The position numbers were made by a program, and so were the translations under genes. A DNA stretch of 64,000 bases from Magallana gigas (lineage: Eukaryota), in assembly GCF_963853765.1 (NCBI RefSeq), contig NC_088860.1:16244001-16308000 (forward strand), given 5' to 3'. Shown here piece by piece: positions 5,215 through 43,400 of this stretch (positions are counted from its first letter, which is position 1; every line of letters begins with the position of its first letter). A model generated the notes under the pieces. It ran no database searches and was not told the DNA's origin. It worked only from the letters and a program-made list of their open reading frames with translations.

Positions 5215-5350
5215 ATTGACCAATCAATTCACACCGTCTCCTCAAAAATTGAGAAACTATTCACGCTTTCTAATTAGCCATCCGTGAAATACTACTGACA
5301 GTTTGAGTAGAGCTCCGCCCCTATCCGAGATTTAAACGTTACAGATCAGT
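5215..5350 (+). promoter_or_regulatory. Probable nanos proximal promoter
   Basis: CCAAT (gaccaatc, about 5219), GC box (ctccgccc, about 5313) and Inr-like TCAGT (5346-5350) just upstream of the ATG. Confidence 0.4.
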
Positions 5351-5375
5351 GAGACAGGGACACTCGAAATGCACG

Positions 5376-6083
5376 ATGGCTCAGTACAGAACACAACTGT
5401 GTCCCCAGGACTCCTACGAACCATTCCAAGATTATCTGGGATTCAGTGACATAGCATGGAACAAGGATCTGGTCTCTAATCTCACACACCTCATGAATTG
5501 TTCGCCATCGTTCCATGACGACAACAGCAGTGATGGCGAATTTTTTGGTTCCAACTTTTCGAGTAGCCCGTGTGTCGGTCCGTGCAGTGACGGGGTTTTT
5601 GCACCCTATGACCCCCTGGACGTTATTCGGAGGGACTCTCTGGAGGACTTCAGACATAACGGACGGGACGTCGAACTGGACGAACTCGATAGCTACCAGG
5701 TAGAACTTCGGAGACACTCGTCCATTTCCGTTCAGTCAGAATCCAACCCGGTGGTTCTCGAAGTGTTGGCATTCAAAGAACGGAAACGAGCTGCCAAAAA
5801 AGCCAAGCAAAAGAAATTGTGCGTTTTCTGTAAAAACAACGGAGAAACTGTTGCCATCTACTCAAGCCATGTGTTGAAGGATGAAGAAGGGCGGGTCTGC
5901 TGCCCTATCCTCCGTAAGTACACGTGCCCTCTCTGTGGGGTCTCTGGGGACAACGCCCACACGATCCGCTATTGTCCGAAAAATGATGGTGAACTTTCCG
6001 CACCCAGCCTCACGAACCTCCATACAAGACGCTTGACAAATGGAAAACGGCGCCGAGGGAGCGACAGTGAAAGCAGCAACTGA
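5376..6083 (+). CDS. nanos: Nanos, single exon, about 235 aa
   Basis: Tandem CCHC zinc fingers CVFCKNNGE...[38 protein letters not shown]. First in-frame ATG is 5376 (acgATGg); the ORF track began at a GTG. AATAAA at 6530-6535. Confidence 0.96.
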
Positions 6084-27975: not shown

Positions 27976-30900
27976 ATGGCGGCAAATTTTGACTGTGTGT
28001 TGATGCATGGACCACCTTTTTCAGTAAATGTCGATTATTTCGTGACTTTTATCATAGAAATTTGAATAGAAATATAGGAATTGAGTCAGTGAACCACTGA
28101 CTGTCATAATTTTACCGACAAAACTTGAGATACTCAGATAATAAACGGTTTAAGTACTGGGCATGCTGCACAGGAGTCGGCAATCTCATGGCTGGGTTTT
28201 TACTTATTTTGACTCTAGGTAATATGTTTTACGGTGCTACCGTTCTGGCGAGCGCAGCAAGAATTACACATACCTTGCACCATTGTCAACCTAGTGTTAT
28301 TTAGGTATCAACGAACGTCAAAGAATTTTTGAGAGAGTATTGCTCTACAATAAGTATGCCAAAGGTACTAATTTTAATGGTTATGATACATACAGCGCAA
28401 CCCCCTACCCCTCCCCCGAGACAAACACAGAGAGAGAGAGAGAGAGACAGCGCCCGGTCCCTGTTTGTAGGTGTGTAATTTCCCCCTTTTAAATTTAATG
28501 GTTTGACTATATGCAATAACTATATAAATTTTTTAACTGTTAATTTGTTCTCTATTGCTTTTCATTTAGTTTAAAATGTCCTATCGTTTATTTTTTCCCT
28601 ACTCATATACTTACCTGCCTTCTGTAAATGCATGCACAATTAGCTTAAAAATGGATCGATATGACAGTAAAGTATGGCTCTTGCTAGTACATGTATATAT
28701 TTATATAATCTCTATATAAAAAAATTAGAAACAAATCATATGTCAATGAGGGAAGTTTCGCAGTCTATACTGAAATAGCTAGTACACGCATTACAGATGT
28801 TTGATCCACCTCTAAATTTATCGCGGGAAATGTAGCGCGAGAGCACTGTGACGTCATCCATGACTTTGTTCATCTTTGTTTACGTATCTCGACTCAAAAC
28901 GAAGGTATAGAAGCAAGTAACAAATCTCTTGAGTCTCGCCAAAGCATATGCGGTACTCTAAACGTGTCTGCAAAGCTCAAGACACTGTAAATTACGAGTT
29001 AAATGTTAGCCATTTTTGGCATACCACCACGGGTGAAAACATTAGAGAGCATTATGGGACGTAGACAAAAAATTTTGTTTGATGAACTGTAGGTTTAGCT
29101 CGTTCTTTTTCCCGCGCACACTGGTTCTTGGAGCTCGCTATTATTTATTGATAAGATTGCCTGTGCATGCTGGGAGTGGAAAAAATAATCTTAACGTGAC
29201 CAGGCCTGGGGGCCATAAAAGTTAGACAAGCTCACTTTAATCTCAGTCTCACTTTTCAACTATATGTTCCTTTGGTTAAAGTGAGACTGAGATCAAAAGT
29301 GAGCTCGCCTAATTTTTCTGGCCCCGGGGCCGGACCCCGGACCTTAAAACTTAGACGAGCTCACTTTTGATCGAAGTCTCACTTTCACAAAAAGGAACAT
29401 ATAGTGTTAAAGTAAACCTGGCCCTGGGGCCATAAAACTTAGACAAGCTCTTTTTTGATCTCAGTCTCATTTTTCCACTATGTTTCTTTCGTAAAATTGA
29501 GACTTAGATCAAAAGTGAGCTCGTCTAAGTTTTATGGCCCCGGGGCCTGAAGTCAAAAGTGAGCTCATTTAAGTTTTTTGGCCCTGGAGCCTGGCTACGC
29601 TCAGGTCAGGGGTCCGTAGAACATCTGTCAATTTTAAAATTATAGTATATATTCTATATTGATGCTTGGAGTAACGTAATTTGTGTAGTCATTTTCATGT
29701 TTAGTATTTCCTGACTAAGATTTCTTTTATACAGTGTTAGTAACACAAATTTACTTTAATATAATATTGCAATTGTACATTGTAGTAGTTGGGGTTATAT
29801 CAGTCTGTATATGGACTGTGGATATCGGCCTTGGTAGCTCAGTTGTAGAGCTCCTGACTAGAGTTGCAGGGGTCCTGGGTTTGATTCCCGGTCCAGCCAT
29901 ATGTTTTCATTGTATTTATATACTCATTTCTCCTTTCCTACTACAGATGGTGCTGTGGCCTTCCTTGTTCAGGCAATTAAATATACATGTAATATATAAG
30001 TCCTGACAAGGTGAACTTGTGTTGTGTCTTCGGTGTCAAAGACTATTTAAGGAGAGAGGAAGGTAGTAGTTGGGGCTATATGAACCGTGGATATAGCCTG
30101 GATAACTCAGTGGTAGAGCTCCTGACTAGAGTTGCAGGGGTCCTGGGTTCGATTCCCAGTCCAGTCATATGTTTTCATTGTATTTATATTTGTATATATA
30201 AATTTTATATACTCATTCCTCCTTTCCTACTACACAATCATATACTGTATATTTTTTTTAGGGAAGTGATGTGTACTATGAAAAACATTTCTCTGGAGAT
30301 CATGTGAAGATTTGTCCAAGGAGCCTATTTTCTTCTAATCAGAATTATGGACTGAGAGACATTGTGCTGAATGTTCAAAGGTGTTTAAAACAGGTACAAC
30401 TTTTCATTTTCAGACATTTTTCTGTTGCAATGTTACAGTTTATGTAGTAAAATGGGGTTTTACAGTGTTAGTGTATGTTCTCCTCAATACCTTTCAATGC
30501 CTGACCTCTGACCCTGGTCAGTCCTTTTACTGGGCGTTTCATGTATGACAGTGCACCCAGCATTACATTAGCAGCCAAACCTAGAGTCCTGTTAGATACA
30601 GTACTAAATGGTCAATGTGCCCCTCCAGGTTTCTACCCACCATACTGCAGCTTTCCAAATCCATGGAACACCATTTATTGTACCATACATTGGTCCATTA
30701 ACATTATGCCCTAGTATGCCATGCCGCCACAATACATTGTATCAGTTTCATGGTTTGTACTTGACCTGATATGATTTATACATGGACAGTAAATTCCATG
30801 TTCAAAGTCCATGTGTCATGAATATATCTTACCGACTTCCTTTGTGTACTGTAAATGACAAGTTGTAAATAAAACCATGAAAAGTAAAGTTAACATTATA

Positions 30901-33900
30901 AAGTTTTACAATAGAGTTACAAATTTCCTACTGGGTACAAAACCTGATATCAACCAAATGCAATACCTATAAACCATATGCAGTATTGGTTATCAGACCT
31001 GGCCCTGGGGCCACAAAACTTAGATGAGCTCACTTTTGATTGTTCCATTTGTAAAAGTGAGACTTAGATCAAAAGTGAGCTCATCCAAGTTACAGGATGG
31101 TTATGTACCGATTACTAGAAATGTAAGTTTACTAAACTTTAGATGTGAGTTATGTTCTTGCTGTGGCAGTTACTGATACATATACAGTTTGTAACTCAGG
31201 AGCTGTATGATAATTTCAGTAAAAAAAATATAACATCAATTACACTACTGATAAGATTCAGGATACTTATATTTTATTTACTTTTTCAGTTGTTGAAGAA
31301 CAGGACCATATAGAACCAGGGTCATGTCAAACTATATATAAATGATATAGTCATCATTTGTCGGATCTATACTGTCTCTTATTTATAACTAAATATGAAT
31401 TAATAGTATATATATCTTCAATTTATACTGCATCTATAAATCATGTCATTTAGCTATAAAACATGGCAATTAGAGAGGCTCAATAGCAGTATTCGTCAGG
31501 AAAGAGGTGAAGATTATGTGGACTATGTGAGGAGGAATACATCAACAAGAAGATTAGTTGATCCAGAGAGACTTGTGCATGGTCTGGCCAATCTTAATGA
31601 TGGAACACCTCACAGAACAATCTGCAACGTTATTCTTCATCAGTATGAACTGGCGAGAGATGTGGGTGATTGGAGATGGATCGAGGCCCTCAGAAGGGAG
31701 TGCAGTACTATTCTGTGTTCAGCGAGATGGGTGGATGACCACCTGCCATCACTGGTTCATGAAGCTCATTCACAGAAAAGAGTACGACCATCAGTCAATG
31801 CATCTTCTGCCACTTCAGCTTCCATGTGTGTGGACATTCATCTTCGTTCTAACCTAGACTTGCAGTTTGAGCGAGAAAACGCTGTTGATGGCAAACACCA
31901 AACTCCATATGTTAACCCAGTGATGGAGGCCTCTGCATACAGACATGGTTTTTCCAATGAACGTCCTGTGTCAACCAGAGAAGATCCATATCTGACCGAG
32001 AACTTTCATTTTGACAAGACTAAGCCAAAGACGACTATAAGTGCTCATATTGTTGAAGCAAATGAAGGCAGTATGGAGATCCCTTCTAAACGAGTACGTC
32101 TTGACTGTGATGATCAAGAACTGACCCAAGAGGTGACGCTGCAGTTTCCATCATCTTTCCAGAGATGTCCGTTTCTAGGATGTGATGTTAGAGAAAAGAA
32201 GATCAAACGGCATGCGCAGAGTAAACACCTTCCAAGGATTTTTAATGATATAAAACCAATACGATCATTGGACGATAAATCCTTATGCCAATTCCAGATG
32301 TCTGCATTGTCATCTCTGGTGAAGAGTGCATTGGGACCAGATGCTGATTTACTATCAGCGGTTGACTACTTGAATTGTTCCAATATTATTCCATCAAACG
32401 CAGTTGTTCATGTTGACACTGCTTCATCCATGCACAGACTCTGTTCGTACCAAGGATGGACGGAACCTTCGGAGGGTTTCAGGTTGTCGCCAATCAACTC
32501 TCCTGCTGTTCTTGTCCATTGGAGATGTTTGGTTGCTTTGATGTCTCTTTTGCAGCCCATGCAATGTGAAGAATTTCGTGTCCATGGGCGTGTTATAACC
32601 GACATGCAGTCTGTTACCAATACTTCAGACATTGGTGGGTCCGATGTGAATACATTGACAGAGGATAAGTTTAAAGCTGTTGATGTTCATTATGGTTCTG
32701 ACTTTGAAATTCCTCATCAATCTGCACCTCATGTAGTAAGTCATTCAAAAACCAATGCCCTTGAAGTACAAGAGTCATATACCTCAAATGTGAATGAAGC
32801 CTTTGATAGCCATTTTCATTTGGACCACACTTGTGCAAGGATATGGGGGCATTATTCACCTTCTGGAAATACGATGGAGGATCTACACTCGGTTATCAAT
32901 CAGAGCAGTTTCCAGCCAAAGTTGAAAGTTAATATTGTAGGAGGTGTTATCAACTACAGTGAGCCTTCAGCACACCCTGAGTTCATTCAAGCTGGAGGAT
33001 CTTGGGGGATAGCTCTTGGTGTACACCCTAAACATGTTAGCGAGCTCACAGCAGAAAAACTCCTTCGTCTGAAGAATTTACTGAATCATCCCAGTGTAGT
33101 GGGTTTAGGTGAAACTGGATTGGATAGGACTGTTCCTGTAAAGCTGTGGAGACAGCAGGAAAAAGTTTTTCGCCAAGTTCTTTCCCTTGTACGTCAAAAC
33201 AAGGTATTGATTCTCCATCTCCGAGGAACTCCAGCAGACCGAATAGGAATAGACGTGCATGCACGGTGTATGCAGATTCTGAAGAAATTTTGTGGATACA
33301 CTCAGCCAATTCATGTCCACTGCTTTACGGGAGATACTGAATTGGTCACGGAATGGATGAGCAACTTCTCTAACGTGTATTTTGGTTTCACTGGTGCTGT
33401 GGAGAACTTTAGTTCTGATCAAGTTGCAGGCCTACAGTCTGTCCCTTTAAACCGGATTCTTTTAGAAACTGATTCCCCTTCCATGCGACCAGGAGGAGGG
33501 AACATCAACACTCCGGCTTTCATTGGGGATGTTGCGAGCCTCGTAGCATCAAAGCTACAGATTCCAGAACATCACCTATTGAAAGAGACTGTTCAAAATG
33601 GTCGTCGATTATATGGCTGTTAGAATATGTTAGAATATGAATGTTTCTGCAGAATTTAAGTCTGGATAATTTCCGACAAAATTCATGCAGAATATCTCTT
33701 GTATATAATTACTACAGTATAGGTCTGAGTGTTGGTTCGACCAAGTAACTTGTATAAATTCTTTAATATCAACTGTACATGTATATTGAACAATTCTTCG
33801 TAAATCTTTACATCATTAATCTTTATAGTCATTAAAATGAAATGGAAAGGAATGAAGTAAAGTAGGGTTTCACACTGTTCATATGTTTCCTCAATACCTC

Positions 33901-36900
33901 TCTATCCCTGACCTCTGACCCTGGTCTACCCCTCACTGGGCATGTAATGTGGTGTCCACTAGAACAGCAGCAGTTCAGACCCCAGCATCCCTGATGTCCA
34001 GACATATTACATACCTATGTTTATCCATGTGTGCATACATTTACATGAATCTATATATTTGCTGGAACCCCTTTTCTTTCTGAGGTAGGATACCAGCTCT
34101 ACATGTATATTTAATATCATGAGTACCTTGTTTTCGTAAACTTGGTTGCACAACATTCATGTTCTGTAGAGTATAGGGTTTACATGTATAGAACATGTGT
34201 ATGTATAGATGCGCTTCTTTGTTTGCATGAATGGGTTTGAAGATAAAAGGATTTTGCCTTAAAGTCAGTTTTTGTAAAGTTTTGAATAGATATACCGGTA
34301 ATTTATGATAAATCTGTATAGACAACTTATTTCAGAAACACATTCATAATTATTTACCAAGCATATTATCTTAACATTAAATTTGTATTAATTATGGTAA
34401 TTATTTATGCTCCTTTTTTTTATTTCTAGCATATTTGATAAGAATAGCAAAGTATGTTAATTAACGGTGGTTTAAATTGTGTTTTTTAGGATCAGAAAGT
34501 TGCTGTGGATGATGACAATGGTACATTTGCGAAAAGATCTTCCTATCTCAAACTTATCCAGAAAAAGGTACTGTATGTTGAGTTATATATAATATTACTG
34601 ATAATTTGAGTTATACAATCATTTCTACTAACTTATTTTAAACAAGTTTGATATTCATTTAGAGCAAAATGAAAAAAAGTACAAATATGTTATATTATTA
34701 TATTCCTATTTCTTCAGAATCTCCTATTCATTGATTTCATTCCATTACATTTCTCAAAATGTAGGCTAAGAACCAAGATGTGTACCAAAGAACCAAAATT
34801 TGGCAATACAGTTCCATAGTGGGTTAAATCAGTATGCTGTGACATACTCCAGCAATGTCGTAAAAATTAGTCAAAGGGTGTCAAGTACCCTTAAAGCCAA
34901 TGTATGAATGATTTCCATTTCCAGTTCCCAGAGAAGACCATAGCTCTGGTCAGTGTTCAGCCTAAATATGGCCAGTCCCAGGTGTTGTGGAACCAAGAAG
35001 TTTGTCTTAACGAGGAGGATGTGACAGTTAGTTATGCAGATATCACATCCTGGTTTGATCCCAAAACAGGCAAAGTGGCCTACAATTCAAGCAAGTTTAT
35101 ATTCATCTATACAAATACCTGTAATAACGTCAGTCGGTTATTGCCATGTTCTGCTAATTGCATCTTTTTTATTGAAATTGATATTTTGTCTTGTGTAAAT
35201 AAATTAATATATTAAAAGGCTTGTTTTACATTCATAGTTCATACCATTGGTATACATGTAGCCTCACAAGGAGGGATTTTATATTTGCATTGTGATTTTG
35301 ACTGCTGTTTAATTACCTATAAATTATAGATGAGGTACCTGATGAAGAGGAAGGATATAAACTATTTCATCATGAAGCACATCTTGAGAACTTTTCAGCC
35401 TTCAAGGTATGGAAATAAATTACATGTATACATTCTAAAGCCTCTTTTTATGACTGTAGTACATGTACATCCCACCCTTGGTCGTGGGGTGTTTTTTTGT
35501 TCTTCGATTTTTTTTTATATGAAACTTGAATCTTTTTTTCCCTCAAAACCTTACATGAAGCCTAGAAATAAAAACTAAACAATTTTGAACATAAATTGAA
35601 GAGAAAATATTGCCAACAAGACTTTACAAATGTAACATCTATAATTATCTTGAGTTATCTTCCTTGTTTCAGTTTGATATTCCAGGTCTGTTGATACAAA
35701 TAGAGAGTATCTACACAAAGTCTGACAATGGACTTAGCCTGAGACATGGGATTAAGGATATTTGTGTTCACTGGAATGAACAGAACCCCATAGGAAGAAT
35801 CATCTTTGTTCAGTTCGGTAGTTATACTTTCAGAGATTTAAGGCAGTATGAGCTGTTATTTATAAATAATCAATTTTACAATAACTTAAGTATTTTCCTT
35901 TAGAATAAGGATATTATAATTACAATAAATGTAATTTAAAGATCACAGATTTAATGTTATATTGATGGAAAACAAGATTTTCATAGTTTTTAATGGAAGG
36001 CTTGAGCAAAAGTGATAATCATATTTTTCTGTTTGTCATGGTGCATGTCCATGATTTATTCAGCAGGTTTTGCTGAAAGAGATAAAACTATAGTTTTATA
36101 GATTTGTTCACTGACAGTATGTGCAACATTTTCTTGTGCATAGTATCGTACATAAAATCATATACTTTTACAAAATGTGGGCTTGTTCATCTCTTTTGAT
36201 AAATAAATATATTTTTAGGAAACAGAGAACCAATGGATGAGATCAGACTTTTACTGACAAAGTTAGCAAAACAGGTAAGGTGAGAATATGCTAAGTTTGC
36301 TTAGACTAATAATTTACAGCTATCTTTTTTGTTTACCAGACGTAAAATTTTACAGGTAACCCCAGTCCTATGATGAGGAGAACAAATATAATGCAGTTAA
36401 AAGATGAATGTATAATATATGTATCATTGGATCTCTTACAATATTAAAAGAAGGTATAAACTATAAAAATACATATACAACTTGACGCTTTACTATAAAC
36501 TCATAAGTTTGTCTATAGTACATCACATTGATACTATTCTTTTTGGGTTTTATCTATCACTATAATCTTGATTTTTACATAAGGCAATGATATGAACAGT
36601 TTCAGGAGAACATTTGATTTTGTAGCTGGATTTCCCATTTTACCTGTTCCACATCTCAGAGCAGACTGCTGCCACTCCTTATTCGGAACCTCCCAATCCA
36701 GGAATTCTTGCATTTTTACAGAAGAGACACTGTCTGTTTCTGCACAGCACAGTAAGTGGTTTAATGTTGAAAGAGAGATGTAAACAGTAGGTAATCCATT
36801 GATAGACAGTATCTATAGGTTTACTATTGATAGCGGTACCATGTACTTTCAATAGGTTTTCTTACTGCCCACTCTATTCAATTTACATGAATGAAATGAA

Positions 36901-39900
36901 AAATTGTTTTAACCTGAAGGATTTTGTTCTTGAACTTCTGCTTTTTTCCAGAAAACCTTGTACATCTACCAGACTCAGAATCACATGAAGATGGCTCAAG
37001 CTGCTGGTGTCTACTGTGTTAAGGTACCTTAGGATGTTTTCTCTATCTTTTCTAGCTTTGTTAAATAAGATTTTTTCTCTAGCTGTGTTAAATGAGATGT
37101 TTTCTCTAATCCTTAGCTTTGTTAATAAGATGTTTTCTCTAGCACTGTTAAATACTTTAAAAAAAAATTACAATTTTTAAAATCTATTTCATGAAAAAAA
37201 TGCTTTGTCTTTAGCAACAAGAATGTTTTAGGCAAAAATAAATGTACGTGTATTTAAAATCATTGCAGATCACACAGGTTCTTCATAACACAGCATTGGT
37301 AAGTGTAATAATTTTTTCTGATTTACTGAATCTTTAAAAAAAATTCTGCTTATATGTTGCTTTGAACTGGTCTCTTTCGATAGTTGAGTAAAACATCACA
37401 GTACATTAATTTTGTTCTGACCTTAGGTCAACGGCAGTCATGTGATCACACGATCACCCGTCCCGGATTTCCTCAGAACCATGGAGATTTTACCAAAGTC
37501 CCAGACACCTTCTAGGATCCCCAGTCTGCCTTGTGTTACACAGGACAGAGATTGGTTGAACAGTTACATGAGATGTGAGCTTCCCCAGGGAAGGAAGGAA
37601 TTCATTTTTGCCCAAGATATTGATACTGTTTTGAGGTATGCCAAAGTCATATTGTACATACTGGTATACATATAAATATAAAATTGTAAAGTTTCAGGTA
37701 CTGTATTTTATAATTGTTTTAGCTACCAAGAGCTTTATCAGAGTTGTGTAACCAAACTGACAAAGCCTGAATGTATCTACACTCAAAGCAGAGGTGGAGA
37801 GGAGGAGCCCAAGGTAGACAATAACACATCACTGAATAGCTCCACCAGAAAGCTGCCATCTTGGATGTTGGGAAAGGAAGAGGCCACGCCAACCAAACTG
37901 TCACTGGACAGGACTGATAGTTCCAGCTCTACAGATGGACTCGGCAGGTACCTGTAGAGGGTTTACTGAAACAATGTATGAATGGAAAGGGGGGGGGGGG
38001 CATAGGACACAAAATTTAATTTTTTATTCATATAGACCAGAAGATAGAAAAATCTTTTATTTTTGTTAATTATCAAGTTTTTTGTAAGACGTACATTTAT
38101 TTGAATATTTATGATTGATGGGAGTTGATTTAAATCAACTCTCCTATGCACTTACTTGGGCAAAGCAAAAGTGAAACAGTGTTTGGACCTAAGCACAAAT
38201 CAATACAGCTGACAACACTTAGTTCTTAAAAATAATCTATAAATTCGATGCTATGTATTCTGAAGCATTGTTTTTCAAGAAAACTTATTTATTAATACCA
38301 TGAAAATAGTAAGATTTTAAATTGTACAAACAGTTTAGATATTTTTTAAAGTCGTATGATTCCTACGCTAGAGTTCAATGTAGTCTTGTTCAACCAGACA
38401 CTTGGCTGTCTCCGTTAACATTCTAGCCTAAGTCACGCAAGCCGTTTGACTCCCCACTCAAACGTTTGTTGTAGAAAGTATTTACAAACGTCAAGGTGAA
38501 CTAGACTAATAATATCCAACAAAACAGAGTCTCTCTTCCTTGTCGGAGATAAATGGAGACAGCCGAGCGTTTGGTTGAACAAGACAAGAGTTCAATCTTG
38601 CCTGGATCCATACAATTTCTCAGAAATATTTCGATTACTGATACTTCTTGCCATGCAAAATCACATCATTGATTTTGAATAAATGATAATCGATAAAATC
38701 AACTCCCATCAGTACTTCAGTACTTTGATATATTTACATTTGTTGATACATTGTTACAGAAGATGGAATTTTTTATTTTAAGAATGATGAATTTAAATTT
38801 TAAGATTTAACTAGTACATGATGCAAGAGGTGAAGCTAATCGATTTATTTTTTTAAGGCAAACATTTTATATAATGAATGAGGAAGAACTTCTAGAAGTT
38901 GCCAAAGACGTTTTGAAGCAGGTAAAAGTTATATGAATATTAGCTTTGTTTTTCATATTCAATTACTGGAAATCGTGAACCTCAGTATTCTGTTGTCATC
39001 AAAATAAATTAATTCAATACAAGATGTTTAAACATACAAATTACAGGCAGGAAAGAACACAGTTCTGAGATATGTTTGTGCAGAGTCTGACATTGGCAAT
39101 AAAACATGGAATAAGAATGGTAAAAATAAGATTGACCCAAAATCCTACAAGCATCAGAATCTCAATGTAAAAGGGAAATCGGCCATTGAAGAGCAGGAGA
39201 GTGACAAGCCTGGCCCAAGTGGATGGAAGCCTAGGAGGGGATCAGGGTTGAAGCCCATTGATAAATCAGAGTTGGACAGACCACAGCAAAAGAGGAGGGG
39301 TGCTGGCAGCAAATGTACCTTACTGGACGACCTGATGGGGGAGACAGGGGTTAGGAAGGCCAGCCCTTGCAAAACTAGGTGAGGGTAAAGATATTCATCT
39401 GTTGCCCTATTGGGCGTGTATTTTCTTGATTTCCAGGCCAAACATATTGTATAGTTTTATAAATTATGACTATTTTTTTGTTGTGTTTGTATTTTATGAA
39501 GAGCCCGGAAACTAGCTTTAATAACGTTTATTTAATATTTGACCTTTAATACCTCTAGATATCAACCTAAGAATAAAGAGGAAGAGAAGGAAAGCCATAT
39601 GTCATCATCAGCTTCAAAATTCAAACCCACAAGTAAGAGGGGTGTCAAAAAAACTCTTGACTTTTTGGAAAAGGGTGATGATCAATCCACATCAATTGGA
39701 TTAAAAACCATGAGTGGTGCCTCAAAAGAGACAGCGTTAAGGGACCTAAGTGAGATATGTGTAAGAGGCAGCTCAGAGGAAATTCTCCCAGATTCCCTAG
39801 AACCTTATCCTTCTGATCTGTTTCCAAGCACACGTGTTAGTTCAAACGAAACTAGAAGAAGGACAGTTGGATTTAAGGACTCTGAAAAATCACCACGGAC

Positions 39901-40474: not shown

Positions 40475-43400
40475 TGTAGCAACCTCTAATGATACAACGT
40501 CCACTAATGATATAATGTTGCATTAGTGGTCAGGATGTTGACCACTAATGATATAATTTTATCATTAACGAACAACCTAACCGTCTACTAATGATATAAT
40601 TTCAGATTTATATCACTAGTGGTCAAAAACCGTAACCTCTAATGATATGGGAAAAAAGTTAGAAATAAGTACTATCTTGACCACTAATGATACACATTTG
40701 AACACATTTTCAATTGCATTAGTGGATGGATTTGCAACCTTTAATGATATAATATGATAAAAGATTATATATNNNNNNNNNNNNNNNNNNNNNNNNNNNN
40801 NNNNNNNNNNNNNNNNNNNNNNNNNNNNNNNNNNNNNNNNNNNNNNNNNNNNNNNNNNNNNNNNNNNNNNNNNNNNNNNNNNNNNNNNNNNNNNNNNNNN
40901 NNNNNNNNNNNNNNNNNNNNNNNNNNNNNNNNNNNNNNNNNNNNNNNNNNNNNNNNNNNNNNNNNNNNNNNNNNNNTAACAACAAAAAATATCAATTAAA
41001 GTTGGTTGAATTAAAACTACTTAAACTATAGGGATCATGTCGTTGTAACAAAGAATATTAATCCAAGTTAAGAATTGACACGCGTTTTATTTTTCAACAT
41101 TGATTATTGATTGGGGAGGGGAGAGGTGATGGGGTTGGGTGGGGGGAGGGGACTTTTCTAACGTTGAAAACTGAGACCAAAAGTCGTGAAATGTATACCC
41201 GGATTTCATTTTATCAACGTTGATTATTGATTTTGGATATTTGGGGGGGGGGGGGGCTTTTCTGAACTACAGGTTTTTGTACTGTCCCTGAAATGGAACT
41301 TGCTCTTCGCAATTATTATGTATCTGATAAAAAATTTCAGCTCCATATTTTAATTCCTAATATTGTCCGATATTCATGCCGATATGGATTTTTGTTTCTG
41401 TTTTTTTTTTTGTTTCTTTATTTTCCCGATAGCAAGAGTTTGTTATTAAGACTAAGAACCCTGTCTCTTGTTGTTAAACTGTGTAGATAGAGTTAAAAGG
41501 AATATATGTCAAACAACATCGTCCCAAGCTATGGTCCGGAGTCTGTTTATATATATATACCCCTCTCAATCATGATCGTTCATGTGGGCCGTGGTTTGCT
41601 AAGATTGCCAAACCCATACCGGCCGTTTATGTTATATTTCCGGTAAATCGCTTCAACTTTAATTTATTTTGAGAAGTCATGATAATTAACTGACAGCACA
41701 ATAATGAACAGTTGTCATAGTTTTATCAGACAAGTCGCGATCAGCGATTATTCAATTAATTTAACTTAACAATAACTTTTCTTAAACTTGCAAGATTAAC
41801 AATAATAAATGATGAATAATAAGCTACTGATCTTGACAGAAAAATAATATTGTGTTCAGTACAGATACAAACACTACACAGAAACTTTTTCGTGGGTGTT
41901 TTTAGGGAGTATTGGACATTATTGACGCATTCGCCGGCGTAACGAAGAATCTTGACTCGGGTTGAAATTTGACCAGGCTGATGAAGCTAGCAGCCATTAA
42001 GCAGCCACTAAGCCCGCAGAAGCTAGCAGCCAATAAGGAAATTCATCAAAGTACTGAGAGTACTCGCACAGAAAATTATATTTCACTTAATTATCGACAT
42101 TTTTTAATTAATATCAAAATGATTAATGCTCAATGAAAAATTTGTACGAGCATTGACGACATTCGAAGCAGTAAAGCTCGCCTGGATAAGAGTTATAAAT
42201 GCGTCTTTGTTGGATAGAAATGAAATAAGTCTATACGGGTCATAAGTTATAAAAATAATGTTATCCTTAGTGTAGTCTTATTGATACAAATAGAAAAAAT
42301 ATATGCATCGTATAAAGTGATATTATGATATAAAAGATTGATTATGATATTATGATATAAAAGAATTTTGACCCGGATATCATTTTTCAACGTTGAACAA
42401 TTGATACCAATGTCGTGAAATTTTTCCTGTGTCAGTTTTCAACAGCTTGAAAAATATTTTTCAAACTTCTAATGACATCGACACGTTAAAAACTGACCCT
42501 GTTGAAAATTGACTCCGACTTCAGAGTTTTGAACTGTCTTCGAACAGAAGTGTAACTTGCTCTTCACAGTTTAATTGTACATGTGTGTACTTAAAAGTTT
42601 CGGTTTCAAAACTTCAACTCTTTCATACTATCCGCTATATTTGCCGTCTTCAGTAATTTGACATTTCAAAGGTTGATTTTTCCGACTTCAATTATTTAAG
42701 ATTTCATTAGAATGAAAACGTGGTATGTAGCAACCTCTAATAATACACCGTCCACTAATGATATAATGTTGCATTAGTGGTCGGGATGTTGACCACTAAT
42801 GATAAAATTTTATCAAACCCGGGTCAATTTACAACCCGGGTTAACATTCTTTGTTACACCGACATAATCACCATTGTTGAAGTAGTTTTAATTCAACCGA
42901 CATTAATTCATATTCTTTGCTGTTCTAATATATAATTAGCAAACCCACATATTCAACTGTACAACAGATTAGTGATTCAATTGTGCTACAGACCACAATA
43001 GCAAATAGTCTTATGAATTGGACCTTTTTATGCTAATAAAATCCCGCTAAAAGTTTAACAATAATTTTTTAATATCGTAAAATTGCTTTTCTTCAAATTT
43101 TCTTCAACCTAAAATATTTAGCACAAGTCCTTTTTGATTAAAGCTGACATGAATTCATTAAAAACATTTGGTCGCCATATTAGTTCGATCGCTCCTCTAC
43201 TGCCACTGGGGTATATATACCGGTTGAGAAAGTTACGGTCGGTTGCTTTCCGAGCGAGGCATTCACGTTGCACGGACTTCAAAATGCATGAACTACACAT
43301 TGTAGTAAAATGTAGTAATAAAGAAAACAACAATCAATGAAATACAAAATATATTTATTCTTTGAAAGGATGTCCAAGGTGTGCGTATTATTTTGCACAG

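What the first reader, a model, noticed from the sequence alone, without database searches (positions are those of the whole stretch)
31443..33623. Intact intronless zinc-finger/TatD nuclease nested sense-strand inside an intron
Seen: a 726-aa uninterrupted ORF in intron 2 (30394-34489) of the PNK/CYREN-like gene, same strand, with its own TATA-like box and polyA-like signal. All canonical TatD metal ligands are present (HxH, E of GETGLD, two His, ETD). The N-terminal ~450 aa hold an unrecognised helical region, a C2H2-like finger and an LVHWRCL motif. Known: cellular TatD proteins are 3'-5' exonuclease/AP-endonuclease enzymes. Inference: intronless structure plus repeat flanks suggest mobile-element cargo or a domesticated copy. 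Its polyA site could truncate host transcripts. A functional link between a nuclease and its NHEJ-like host is possible but speculative.
Basis: partly seen in the sequence, partly recalled or inferred. Interest (0 to 1): 0.75.

Follow-up and report, generated by a model that had tools for sequence, protein, structure and literature searches.

The report
Retrotransposon nuclease gene stranded in intron
The 726-codon gene is the surviving third gene (a zinc-finger plus TatD nuclease) of an old oyster Ty3/Gypsy-type retrotransposon that lost its gag and pol genes, has since been kept intact by selection, and is spliced into the host gene's transcripts through the element's own splice sites.

Summary
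An intact 726-aa ORF (31443-33623, +) lies in intron 2 of an uncharacterised host gene. It has a complete TatD nuclease domain and an unrecognised N-terminal part.

It is not a cellular TATDN paralogue. Its closest relatives (53-54% identity) are the third ORF of intact Ty3/Gypsy-like LTR retrotransposons in Crassostrea angulata and Saccostrea. The order there is LTR, ORF1, pol (RT-RNaseH-integrase-PHD), ZnF-TatD ORF, LTR. The same pol-TatD linkage occurs in a starfish. TatD-only or gag-like+TatD LTR elements occur in Mya arenaria and another animal.

The "repeat flanks" are decayed LTRs (30443-~30715; 33853-34155). Gag and pol are gone and no primer-binding site remains.

The copy is absent from the orthologous Saccostrea intron but present in a related oyster. 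Folded domains evolve at pN/pS 0.24 and linkers near neutrality. Frameshift alleles also segregate.

A spliced transcript from the related species runs from the element's acceptor (31290) to the 3' LTR donor (34084) and on into host exon 3. So the unit behaves as an exon, not as a separate gene with its own polyA site.

Verdict: a new variant of a known kind, and a candidate domesticated retroelement nuclease.

The parts
30439..30442 (+). Possible 4-bp target-site duplication, 5' copy (TTTA). The 3' copy is TTCA at 34156-34159.
   Evidence: Three of four bases match. The intact C. angulata relative has a perfect 4-bp TSD, TTTC. Tentative.
30443..30715 (+). 5' LTR remnant. It starts TGTAG. The start is uncertain by about 10 nt and the end is approximate.
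   Evidence: Direct repeat with 33853-33950, about 85% identical over roughly 100 nt. Weak alignment to positions 16-230 of the C. angulata element LTR. The donor motif is lost in this copy.
30716..30996 (+). Leader remnant where a primer-binding site and gag-pol would follow. Neither is present.
   Evidence: No match to the lineage's PBS with up to 2 mismatches. No tblastn match to pol or ORF1 of the intact relative anywhere in the window.
30997..31110 (.). Secondary insertion of a palindromic MITE-like repeat. It belongs to the same family as the copies at 29199-29594.
   Evidence: Inverted and direct repeat families D1, D2, D4 and I5-I8, I14. Logan contigs break here.
31113..31442 (+). Region homologous to the pol-ORF3 spacer of autonomous elements. 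It holds the splice acceptor (AG at 31288-31289; the exon starts at 31290).
   Evidence: It aligns to Saccostrea L001 9590-10003 and C. angulata L011 9642-9958, with a conserved pyrimidine tract, CAG and a downstream ACCAGGGTCATGTC block. Transcript contig L008 starts exactly at 31290. The motif is kept in all alleles.
31290..34084 (+). A 2795-nt exon-like unit seen in a spliced transcript of the related species. It carries the whole ORF and joins host exon 3 at 34490.
   Evidence: L008 is collinear with this stretch and then with 12 further host exons, without introns. Read in from host exon 2, it gives a stop after 7 codons.
31443..33623 (+). ORF3 relic: a 726-aa ZnF-TatD protein, stop codon included.
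   Evidence: dN/dS against the orthologous copy is 0.31.
31506..31769 (+). N-terminal helical domain, aa 22-109.
   Evidence: AF2 pLDDT is mostly above 90. It is conserved in ORF3 of the autonomous oyster elements and in Argopecten and Mya. dN/dS for aa 1-130 is 0.34. No Pfam hit.
32151..32597 (+). Zinc-finger plus helical module, aa 237-385. It has the C-x4-C-x9-H-x4-H ligands and the NSPA..HWR motif.
   Evidence: Nearly invariant C242, C247, H257, H262, P264, W360. AF2 pLDDT 95.7 and pTM 0.90. No match in PDB (best E 1.7) or BFVD (best E 0.55). No Pfam or PDB sequence hit. dN/dS 0.24.
32790..33620 (+). TatD TIM-barrel nuclease domain, aa 450-726, with all metal ligands.
   Evidence: Pfam PF01026 E 1.5e-38. 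Foldseek matches TatD/YcfH structures at E 1e-13 to 1e-14 with TM about 0.79. The profile is closest to E. coli YcfH, E 9e-39. dN/dS 0.17.
33834..33852 (+). Purine-rich tract just upstream of the 3' LTR, in the position of a polypurine tract.
   Evidence: Read from the sequence. PPT-like tracts sit at the same place in L011, L012 and L002. Inference only.
33853..34155 (+). 3' LTR remnant. It ends ..CACAACA and holds the splice donor (exon end at 34084, GT at 34085-34086).
   Evidence: It aligns along the whole 258-bp LTR of the intact C. angulata element, and its GAG|GTAGGATACCAG aligns with that LTR's CAG|GTAAGACACCAG. A donor 40-71 nt from the LTR end is found in every intact LTR examined. 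It is used in L008.
30256..30393 (+). Host gene exon 2 (context).
   Evidence: tblastn with Saccostrea orthologues P0207 and P0208.
34490..34570 (+). Host gene exon 3 (context). It is the acceptor for the LTR donor.

Best explanation
The ORF is the accessory third gene (ORF3) of a Ty3/Gypsy-like LTR retrotransposon lineage of marine invertebrates.

In intact members the order is LTR, PBS, ORF1, pol (PR-RT-RNaseH-integrase-PHD), splice acceptor, ZnF-TatD ORF3, PPT, LTR. The LTR carries a splice donor 40-71 nt from its end. ORF3 is therefore most likely made from a spliced subgenomic mRNA, as retroviral env is.

One such element, or a gag/pol-deleted derivative of it, inserted in sense orientation into intron 2 of the host gene in the Crassostrea/Magallana lineage. 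Since then its LTRs and PBS have decayed and gag-pol is gone, so it is no longer mobile. ORF3 has been kept open, and its three folded domains have been under purifying selection since two oyster species split. That points to use by the host (domestication) or to some benefit of the protein.

Its native acceptor (31290) and the donor in its 3' LTR (34084) let the spliceosome treat the 2.8-kb unit as an exon joined to host exon 3. That makes a TatD-coding mRNA with host exons as its tail. If the unit is joined to exon 2, the host reading frame stops after 7 codons.

The protein is predicted to be a divalent-metal nuclease of the YcfH/TatD type, aimed by a new zinc-finger/helical module.

Shown here: homology, element architecture, LTR identity, absence from Saccostrea, selection, and splicing in the related species. 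Inferred: subgenomic splicing in the intact elements, nuclease activity, host use, and expression in this species.
For: ORF3 identity.
- In C. angulata (L011) and Saccostrea (L001), the 53-54% identical proteins lie about 400 nt downstream of intact 1227-1234-aa pol ORFs with RVT_1, RT_RNaseH, Integrase_H2C2, rve and PHD.
- L011 has 100% identical 260-bp LTRs, TG..CA ends, a 4-bp TSD, a PBS and a PPT.
- Acanthaster L014 has PR-RT, RNaseH, INT and PHD, followed by the same ZnF-TatD ORF.
- Mya copies on two chromosomes share 7.2 kb at 98%, bounded by 247-bp LTRs. L002 is an LTR-TatD-LTR-TatD-LTR array. Both carry the same 12-nt PBS.
- In the tree, the window copy plus its orthologue is sister to the ORF3s of the autonomous oyster elements, with 100/100 support.

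LTR relics and splice sites: the 3' LTR and its donor are homologous to the intact LTR, the acceptor is homologous, and the lineage's LTRs carry a donor at a conserved position.

Insertion history: the Saccostrea orthologous intron is 797 nt and empty. The same locus is occupied in the related species.

Selection: pN/pS is 0.24 in the folded domains, which rejects neutrality at P about 1e-16. It is 0.71 in the linkers, P 0.11.

Locus, not family: five Logan contigs are collinear with the window for 3.5-7.1 kb at 96.4-97.1%.

Transcript: L008.
Against: - Loss-of-function alleles segregate. In this species there is a frameshift near aa 197 (cluster P0004, 13 member sequences, with P0162 and P0170). 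In the related species there are truncations at about aa 284, 516 and 558. Constraint is therefore not absolute, and within-species dN/dS is 0.38-0.49.
- Splicing was seen in one contig from a related species only. The contigs fetched from the window's own species are unspliced, probably genomic.
- On the L008 transcript the TatD stop lies far upstream of many exon junctions, so that mRNA may be a target of nonsense-mediated decay.
- The TSD is imperfect and the 5' LTR aligns only weakly.
- Whole-genome copy number was not measured.
- The role of ORF3 in the element's life cycle is unknown.
Confidence: 0.8

Rival explanations
1. One reading: an independent nested gene, a retro-copied or duplicated cellular TATDN-type nuclease with its own promoter and polyA site, perhaps cooperating with its NHEJ-like host gene.
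For: The ORF is intact, intronless and under purifying selection. TATA-like and ATTAAA strings exist. The host protein carries a Ku-binding-like motif, RKLPSWML.
Against: The nearest relatives are ORF3 of LTR retrotransposons, not cellular genes. The flanks are LTRs. The unit is absent from the orthologous Saccostrea intron. The TATA-like string lies inside the transcribed exon, and the hexamer is read through in L008. PolyA-type hexamers are at chance density. The family profile scores TATDN1 and TATDN3 far below bacterial YcfH. Relatives sit at unrelated loci.
Confidence: 0.07
2. A neutrally decaying retrotransposon fragment whose ORF is still open only by chance or because it is young, with no function for host or element.
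For: Frameshift and truncated alleles segregate in both species. Within-species dN/dS is 0.38-0.49. The linkers evolve almost neutrally.
Against: Between orthologous copies dS is 0.23, yet pN/pS is 0.24 in the folded domains and 0.19 in TatD, which rejects neutrality at P of 1e-12 to 1e-16. The LTRs and PBS have decayed far more than the ORF. Most sampled alleles keep all 726 codons. The catalytic and zinc ligands are intact.
Confidence: 0.1
3. A still-mobile non-autonomous TatD-only LTR element, like the L002 and Mya elements. It would be copied in trans by autonomous relatives, and the ORF would be conserved by selection at the level of the element.
For: TatD-only and gag-like+TatD LTR elements exist and are multi-copy elsewhere. 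An active autonomous relative exists in a congener, with 100% identical LTRs.
Against: No PBS. The two LTRs are alignable to each other over only about 100 nt, at 85%. A MITE has inserted inside the element. All fetched contigs of the at-least-90% cluster share the same flanks. The copy is orthologous in two species. The nearest autonomous ORF3 is only 53-54% identical, so recent trans-copying or gene conversion is unlikely.
Confidence: 0.03

Closest known systems
Enzymatic ORF3s of bdelloid rotifer LTR retrotransposons (DEDDy-type 3'-5' exonuclease, GDSL esterase; Juno and Vesta families), PMC5408684
   Same: A hydrolytic, non-envelope accessory ORF sits downstream of pol in Ty3/Gypsy-type elements, with its catalytic residues intact. 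It is shared among divergent elements, and its role in the life cycle is unknown.
   Different: The enzyme here has a different fold: a TatD TIM-barrel metallo-nuclease rather than a DnaQ-like DEDD nuclease. It is fused to a new zinc-finger/helical module. The hosts are different phyla (molluscs, echinoderms, a brachiopod). TatD is not mentioned in that paper (0 occurrences).
Envelope-carrying Ty3/Gypsy elements (errantiviruses) and retroviruses, which make ORF3/env from a spliced subgenomic mRNA (PMC13524379, PMC5408687; the mechanism is from general knowledge)
   Same: Three-ORF layout, with a donor near the 5' end and an acceptor just upstream of ORF3. Here the donor in the LTR and the acceptor before ORF3 are conserved across the lineage, and both are used in L008.
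   Different: ORF3 is a soluble nuclease, not an envelope protein. No membrane-protein domain matched and the model shows three soluble domains. Transmembrane prediction was not run. Splicing in the intact elements is inferred, not observed.
Bacterial YcfH/TatD and animal TATDN1/2/3 metal-dependent nucleases (PF01026)
   Same: Full-length domain match, all metal ligands, TIM-barrel model.
   Different: A 450-aa N-terminal extension with two extra folded domains. The gene resides in a retroelement. It scores below the NCBIfam cut-offs for the bacterial subfamilies. It is closer to YcfH (E 9e-39) than to TATDN3 (1.6e-16) or TATDN1 (1.8e-14). TATDN2 could not be compared.
Domesticated Ty3/Gypsy-derived host genes (gag- or integrase-derived, such as GIN1 and the PEG10/RTL family; review PMC3424704, not read here, listed)
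   Same: A single retroelement ORF survives at a fixed locus under purifying selection while the rest of the element decays.
   Different: The survivor is an accessory nuclease ORF, not gag, protease or integrase. It sits inside another gene's intron and uses the element's own splice sites. Null alleles still segregate, so domestication is not proven.
Non-autonomous LTR elements (LARD/TRIM type; general knowledge)
   Same: LTR-bounded units without pol. L002 and the Mya element fit this.
   Different: Classical LARDs and TRIMs carry no conserved ORF. These keep one intact enzyme gene.

Membership tests
TatD/YcfH metal-dependent nuclease domain (Pfam PF01026) | Full-length match above Pfam's gathering score | tested here: met
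   133.1 bits against a cut-off of 27; profile positions 1-253 of 253; aa 454-725.
TatD/YcfH metal-dependent nuclease domain (Pfam PF01026) | Metal-binding and catalytic residues (HxH, Glu of GExGLD, two His, ExD) | tested here: met
   H457, H459, E557, H592, H624/H626, E675 and D677 are present and at least 90% conserved in 70 homologues. They align to YcfH 1yix.
TatD/YcfH metal-dependent nuclease domain (Pfam PF01026) | TIM-barrel fold | tested here: met
   AF2 pLDDT is mostly above 90 over aa 450-726. Foldseek matches 6l25, 1j6o, 4p5u and 1yix at E 1e-12 to 4e-14, target TM 0.79-0.80.
TatD/YcfH metal-dependent nuclease domain (Pfam PF01026) | Nuclease activity | not testable with these tools
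   Needs purified protein and substrates.
Bacterial YchF/TatD exonuclease subfamily (NCBIfam TIGR00010) and equivalogs TatD, YcfH-like, QatD | Score above the curated cut-off | tested here: not met
   118 bits against 206 for TIGR00010; 67 against 395 for TatD; 52 against 230 for QatD.
Cellular TATDN1/2/3 orthologue | Conserved single-copy locus across related bivalves | tested here: not met
   The orthologous intron of Saccostrea cucullata is 797 nt with no TatD and no similarity. The Saccostrea and C. angulata relatives lie in LTR elements elsewhere.
Cellular TATDN1/2/3 orthologue | Closest sequence kin are TATDN proteins | tested here: inconclusive
   TATDN3 (E 1.6e-16) and TATDN1 (E 1.8e-14) score far below YcfH (E 9e-39). 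TATDN2 has no PDB entry and no sequence was at hand, so it was not compared.
Ty3/Gypsy (Metaviridae) LTR retrotransposon, as a relic | Two LTRs with TG..CA ends | tested here: met
   The 3' LTR (33853-34155) aligns over the whole LTR of the intact C. angulata element and ends CA. The 5' copy starts TGTAG. The two copies are about 85% identical over roughly 100 nt.
Ty3/Gypsy (Metaviridae) LTR retrotransposon, as a relic | Primer-binding site after the 5' LTR | tested here: not met
   No match to TGGCGCTGCGAC with up to 2 mismatches. It is present in L002, L012 and L013, and a variant is present in L011.
Ty3/Gypsy (Metaviridae) LTR retrotransposon, as a relic | gag and pol (RT, RNase H, integrase) | tested here: not met
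   None in the window. They are present next to the closest relatives: L001, L011 and L014. The window copy is therefore a deleted derivative, not a complete member.
Ty3/Gypsy (Metaviridae) LTR retrotransposon, as a relic | Target-site duplication of 4-6 bp | tested here: inconclusive
   TTTA against TTCA. The TSD is perfect (TTTC) in L011.
Domesticated (exapted) transposon gene | Orthologous position in more than one species, and immobile | tested here: met
   L008 and L009 from a species 12% diverged share the flanks and the host exons. PBS lost and LTRs decayed. The genome-wide count was not done.
Domesticated (exapted) transposon gene | Purifying selection after insertion | tested here: met
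   Overall dN/dS is 0.31. Folded domains have pN/pS 0.24 (P 1e-16) and linkers 0.71 (not significant). This rests on one species pair only.
Domesticated (exapted) transposon gene | Expression and a host phenotype | tested here: inconclusive
   One spliced transcript contig from the related species. No data for this species. Null alleles segregate. A phenotype cannot be tested with these tools.
Classical C2H2 zinc finger (Pfam zf-C2H2 and kin) | Profile match | tested here: not met
   No Pfam hit for aa 1-453 at E up to 1. Even so, C-x4-C-x9-H-x4-H is nearly invariant and the AF2 model shows a beta-hairpin plus helix. It probably binds zinc as an atypical finger.

The most novel reading that the evidence does not exclude
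ZnF-TatD ORF3 marks a so far undescribed clade of metazoan Ty3/Gypsy retroelements (molluscs, echinoderms, a brachiopod). These elements would express a nuclease from an LTR-donor-spliced subgenomic mRNA. The window copy would be a host-co-opted nuclease that also acts as a frame-breaking cassette exon, or alternative 5' exon, of a Ku-binding-motif (NHEJ-like) gene. Retroelement nuclease expression and host gene output would then be coupled in one transcription unit.
Probability: 0.3. Interest if true: 0.8.

Novelty: new variant of a known kind. Interest (0 to 1): 0.62.

Why it matters
LTR retrotransposons rarely carry enzymes beyond pol. A conserved TatD nuclease with a new zinc-finger/helical domain, linked to pol in oysters and a starfish and also found in sea urchins and a brachiopod, would add a new accessory function to Metaviridae-type elements. 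It raises a testable question: what does a 3'-5' exonuclease / AP-endonuclease-type enzyme do for reverse transcription, integration or evasion of host defence?

The window copy is a natural experiment. The accessory gene has outlived its element, shows selection at the host level, and is wired into a host gene through the element's own splice signals. It also explains why genome annotations list scores of "uncharacterized protein" and "TatD" genes in bivalves, and even in symbiont MAGs.

For the scan, the result turns an "odd nested nuclease gene" into a defined object with clear experiments.

Tried and rejected
- Synteny between the window and the Saccostrea TatD locus: none. The shared sequence between L001 and L011 turned out to be the retroelement itself, not host synteny.
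- I first suspected that the 133-member cluster at 90% or more meant many copies. The fetched contigs are alleles of one locus.
- PBS search in the window: none.
- pol and ORF1 remnants in the window: none.
- Pfam, NCBIfam and PDB sequence searches of the N-terminal 453 aa and of the ZnF module: nothing.
- Foldseek of the ZnF module against PDB and BFVD: nothing below E 0.5.
- Pfam on long family members (900-1543 aa): TatD only.
- Pfam on the Mya gag-like ORF and the 890-aa ORF1 of L011: nothing, and no CCHC motif in L011 ORF1.
- Host gene identity: no Pfam or PDB match.
- Same-species transcript evidence: the last look-up (L015) was genomic.
- Literature: no paper in the held library links TatD with Gypsy or LTR retrotransposons. 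Troyka elements were considered and set aside because they have CG..CG ends and 3-bp TSDs. Repbase and Dfam could not be searched.
- A comparison with TATDN2 was not possible because no sequence was available from the tools.
- No contig that I took for human was met. The N run at 40773-40976 was left as it is.
Full report
**1. The observation**

The window holds an ATG-to-stop ORF of 726 codons at 31443-33623 on the + strand. It is three times longer than any other ORF in the 64 kb. It is far beyond the longest ORFs in shuffled sequence, which reached at most 162-207 aa. GC content rises to 0.42-0.46 over the ORF against about 0.30-0.38 around it.

Orthologous host proteins from Saccostrea and Magallana gigas map exon 2 to 30256-30393 and exon 3 to 34490-34570.

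Pfam finds a complete TatD_DNase domain at aa 454-725 (133 bits, cut-off 27). The HxH, GExGLD Glu, two His and ExD ligands are all present. They are nearly invariant across 70 homologues.

**2. The protein**

An AlphaFold model built on a 70-sequence alignment shows three confident domains joined by two disordered linkers:
- a helical domain, aa 22-109;
- a zinc-finger plus helical module, aa 237-385;
- the TatD TIM barrel, aa 450-726;
- linkers at aa 110-234 and 387-448.

The barrel matches solved TatD/YcfH structures (Foldseek E 1e-12 to 4e-14). A family profile scores E. coli YcfH best (E 9e-39). That is well above human TATDN3 (1.6e-16) and TATDN1 (1.8e-14).

The middle module carries nearly invariant C242, C247, H257 and H262 (C-x4-C-x9-H-x4-H) and the NSPA..HWR motif. 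Modelled alone it reaches pLDDT 95.7 and pTM 0.90. It has no match in PDB (best E 1.7) or BFVD (best E 0.55), and none by sequence in Pfam or PDB. It is a real domain of so far unknown fold class.

**3. The family**

A full scan of 1.84 billion representative proteins gave 224 clusters at E below 1e-30. Many of them align from about aa 240 to the C-terminus and have lengths of 450-1500 aa.

Named members come from:
- bivalves: Saccostrea, Magallana/Crassostrea, Pinctada, Argopecten, Mya, Dreissena, Mercenaria;
- the gastropod Haliotis;
- echinoderms: Strongylocentrotus, Diadema, Acanthaster;
- the brachiopod Lingula.

Within genomes the family behaves like a repeat. Mya arenaria has 13 distinct members at 90% identity or more, on at least 10 chromosomes. 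Argopecten has five.

**4. The genomic context of relatives decides the identity**

- Mya arenaria. Copies on two chromosomes share 7.2 kb at 98%, bounded by 247-bp direct terminal repeats. The repeats start TG and end CA. They are followed by TGGCGCTGCGAC and preceded by a purine tract. Inside are a 428-aa ORF with a degenerate zinc knuckle and the TatD ORF, but no pol.
- Contig L002 (unnamed animal, 38-42% identical protein). This is an LTR-TatD-LTR-TatD-LTR array with the very same 12-nt primer-binding site.
- C. angulata (L011) and Saccostrea cucullata (L001). The proteins closest to the window's (53-54%) lie about 400 nt downstream of intact pol ORFs of 1227-1234 aa with RVT_1, RT_RNaseH, Integrase_H2C2, rve and a C-terminal PHD finger.
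- L011 in detail. It has 100% identical 260-bp LTRs, a 4-bp target duplication, a PBS and a PPT. It looks like a complete, recently inserted 12.3-kb Ty3/Gypsy-type element with three ORFs.
- Acanthaster planci (L014). This contig shows PR-RT, RNase H, integrase and PHD, followed by the same ZnF-TatD ORF.
- Tree. The window protein plus its orthologue is sister, with 100/100 support, to the ORF3s of the autonomous oyster elements.

**5. Anatomy of the window copy**

Window 33853-34155 aligns along the whole LTR of the C. angulata element and ends ..CACAACA. The 5' copy (30443 to about 30715) is more decayed. The two copies align with each other over only about 100 nt, at about 85%.

No PBS is left, and no trace of gag or pol. 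A palindromic MITE-like repeat has inserted at 30997-31110.

Window 31113-31442 is homologous to the pol-ORF3 spacer of the intact elements. That includes a pyrimidine tract, CAG and a conserved downstream block.

A possible 4-bp duplication (TTTA and TTCA) flanks the unit.

The element spans about 30443-34155 (3.7 kb). That accounts for most of the difference between this 4096-nt intron and the 797-nt, element-free intron 2 of Saccostrea.

**6. One locus, two species, under selection**

Five contigs from public read sets are collinear with the window for 3.5-7.1 kb at 96.4-97.1%. The 133-member protein cluster is therefore allelic variation at this locus, not many copies.

Contigs from a species about 12% diverged (L008, L009) carry the same unit with the same flanks.

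Between these orthologous copies dS is 0.23 and dN/dS is 0.31 overall. By region:

| Region | dN/dS |
|---|---|
| TatD | 0.17 |
| ZnF module | 0.24 |
| N-terminal domain | 0.34 |
| Linker aa 131-236 | 0.82 |
| Linker aa 386-450 | 0.89 |

Neutrality is rejected for the folded domains (P about 1e-16) and not for the linkers (P 0.11). The non-coding flanks are 82-84% identical and contain indels.

Constraint is not absolute:
- a frameshift allele near aa 197 (13 member sequences) segregates in this species;
- an in-frame deletion of aa 123-194 also exists in this species;
- truncations at about aa 284, 516 and 558 occur in the related species.

**7. Expression**

L008 is a spliced transcript. It starts exactly at 31290, just after the acceptor. 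It runs unbroken through the ORF to 34084. It then continues with host exon 3 and twelve further host exons, with no introns.

The donor used, GAG|GTAGGATACCAG, lies inside the 3' LTR and aligns with CAG|GTAAGACACCAG in the intact C. angulata LTR. A consensus donor 40-71 nt from the LTR end is present in the LTRs of L011, L001, Mya and L002, and in the window's 3' LTR. Acceptor-like tracts precede ORF3 in Acanthaster and Mya. Both motifs are kept in all alleles of this species.

The simplest reading is that intact elements make ORF3 from an LTR-donor to ORF3-acceptor spliced mRNA, as retroviruses do for env. This is an inference. In the window these same signals make the relic behave as an exon.

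If the unit is joined to host exon 2, the host frame stops after 7 codons. On L008 the host reading frame has no start codon near its 5' end. That RNA is therefore in effect a TatD mRNA with a host-exon tail.

An M. gigas gene model for the host (P0206) starts inside the 3' LTR relic. This is independent evidence that the donor is used there. In this window's haplotype that ATG is out of frame.

They are at chance density.

**8. What it most likely does**

The protein is predicted to be an active divalent-metal nuclease of the YcfH/TatD type, which cellular studies describe as a 3'-5' exonuclease and AP endonuclease (general knowledge). It would be aimed by the zinc-finger/helical module.

For the intact elements, I think an auxiliary role in processing replication or integration intermediates is most likely. 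Interference with host or rival nucleic acids is the alternative. The nearest precedent is the DEDDy 3'-5' exonuclease ORF3 of bdelloid rotifer LTR retrotransposons, whose role is also unknown (PMC5408684).

For the window copy, selection between orthologous and evidently immobile copies points to a benefit at the host level. I rate true domestication at about 0.4-0.5. I rate ORF3 origin from a Ty3/Gypsy-type element at above 0.9.

Nothing links the nuclease functionally to its host gene. That gene is uncharacterised but carries a Ku-binding-like RKLPSWML motif.

**9. Novelty**

Additional ORFs in LTR retrotransposons and domesticated retroelement genes are both known kinds. A TatD nuclease with this new N-terminal module as ORF3 was not found in any paper of the held library. 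Repbase and Dfam could not be checked. I therefore rate it a new variant of a known kind.

**10. Limits**

- One species pair for dN/dS.
- One transcript contig, from the related species.
- No genome-wide copy count.
- TATDN2 not compared.
- The species of the window and of the Logan runs is not established. The window's host exons are 79-96% identical to the M. gigas host protein, most of them above 88%.
- No contig taken for human was met.
- The N run at 40773-40976 was left untouched.

Noticed in passing
window 5349-6083 (+): An intronless 244-aa ORF with a Nanos zinc-finger RNA-binding domain (zf-nanos, E 2e-26). Probably the oyster nanos gene.
   Followed up: partly
window 29828-29921 and 30096-30189: Two copies (93% identical) of a tRNA-like repeat. 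ARAGORN calls a tRNA-like structure with an odd anticodon at 30096-30167. It looks like a tRNA-derived SINE. The second copy lies about 65 nt upstream of host exon 2, which starts at 30256.
   Followed up: no
window 29199-29594 and 30997-31110: A family of palindromic, MITE-like repeats (GGCCCCGGGGCC core with AAAGTGAGCTC arms). One copy is inserted inside the LTR-element relic. Public-read contigs break there.
   Followed up: partly
window 37847-37870 (+), host gene exon: The host protein carries RKLPSWML, which resembles the APLF/CYREN-type Ku-binding motif (from memory). Otherwise the host gene has no Pfam or PDB match.
   Followed up: partly
window 34045-34084: The M. gigas UniProt model of the host protein (P0206) starts MNIFAGTPFLSE inside the 3' LTR relic, so an LTR-derived alternative first exon has been annotated. 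In this window's haplotype the ATG (34045-34047) is out of frame, and an in-frame TGA sits at 34046-34048.
   Followed up: partly
proteins P0004, P0162, P0170, P0002; P0172-P0185 (alleles of window 31443-33623): Segregating broken alleles. In this species there is a frameshift near aa 197 and an in-frame deletion of aa 123-194. In the related species there are truncations at about aa 284, 516 and 558.
   Followed up: partly
L011 388-12702 (Crassostrea angulata CM046778.1): An apparently complete 12.3-kb Ty3/Gypsy-like element with 100% identical LTRs and a 4-bp TSD. It lies on the sense strand inside a gene model that merges photolyase, RWD, kinase and HisRS-like domains (GCN2-like). Its 890-aa Q/P-rich ORF1 has no Pfam hit and no CCHC knuckle.
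   Followed up: partly
L012 5991-13179 and L013 5984-13179 (Mya arenaria): A non-autonomous 7.2-kb LTR element (a gag-like ORF with a degenerate knuckle, plus ZnF-TatD, and no pol). It is present in at least 10 near-identical copies on different chromosomes.
   Followed up: partly
L002 198-6385 (ENA contig ctg174834): A tandem LTR-TatD-LTR-TatD-LTR array with 246-bp LTRs. It has the same 12-nt PBS (TGGCGCTGCGAC) as the distantly related Mya element. The second TatD copy is split into two ORFs.
   Followed up: partly
proteins P0042, P0057, P0105, P0248: Proteins labelled as bacterial MAG 'TatD family hydrolase' (Candidatus Thiodiazotropha, Sedimenticola). At least P0042, P0057 and P0105 carry the animal ZnF-TatD module. 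They are probably clam-host retroelement DNA binned into symbiont genomes.
   Followed up: no
window 40773-40976: A run of 204 N just downstream of the host gene's last coding exon.
   Followed up: no
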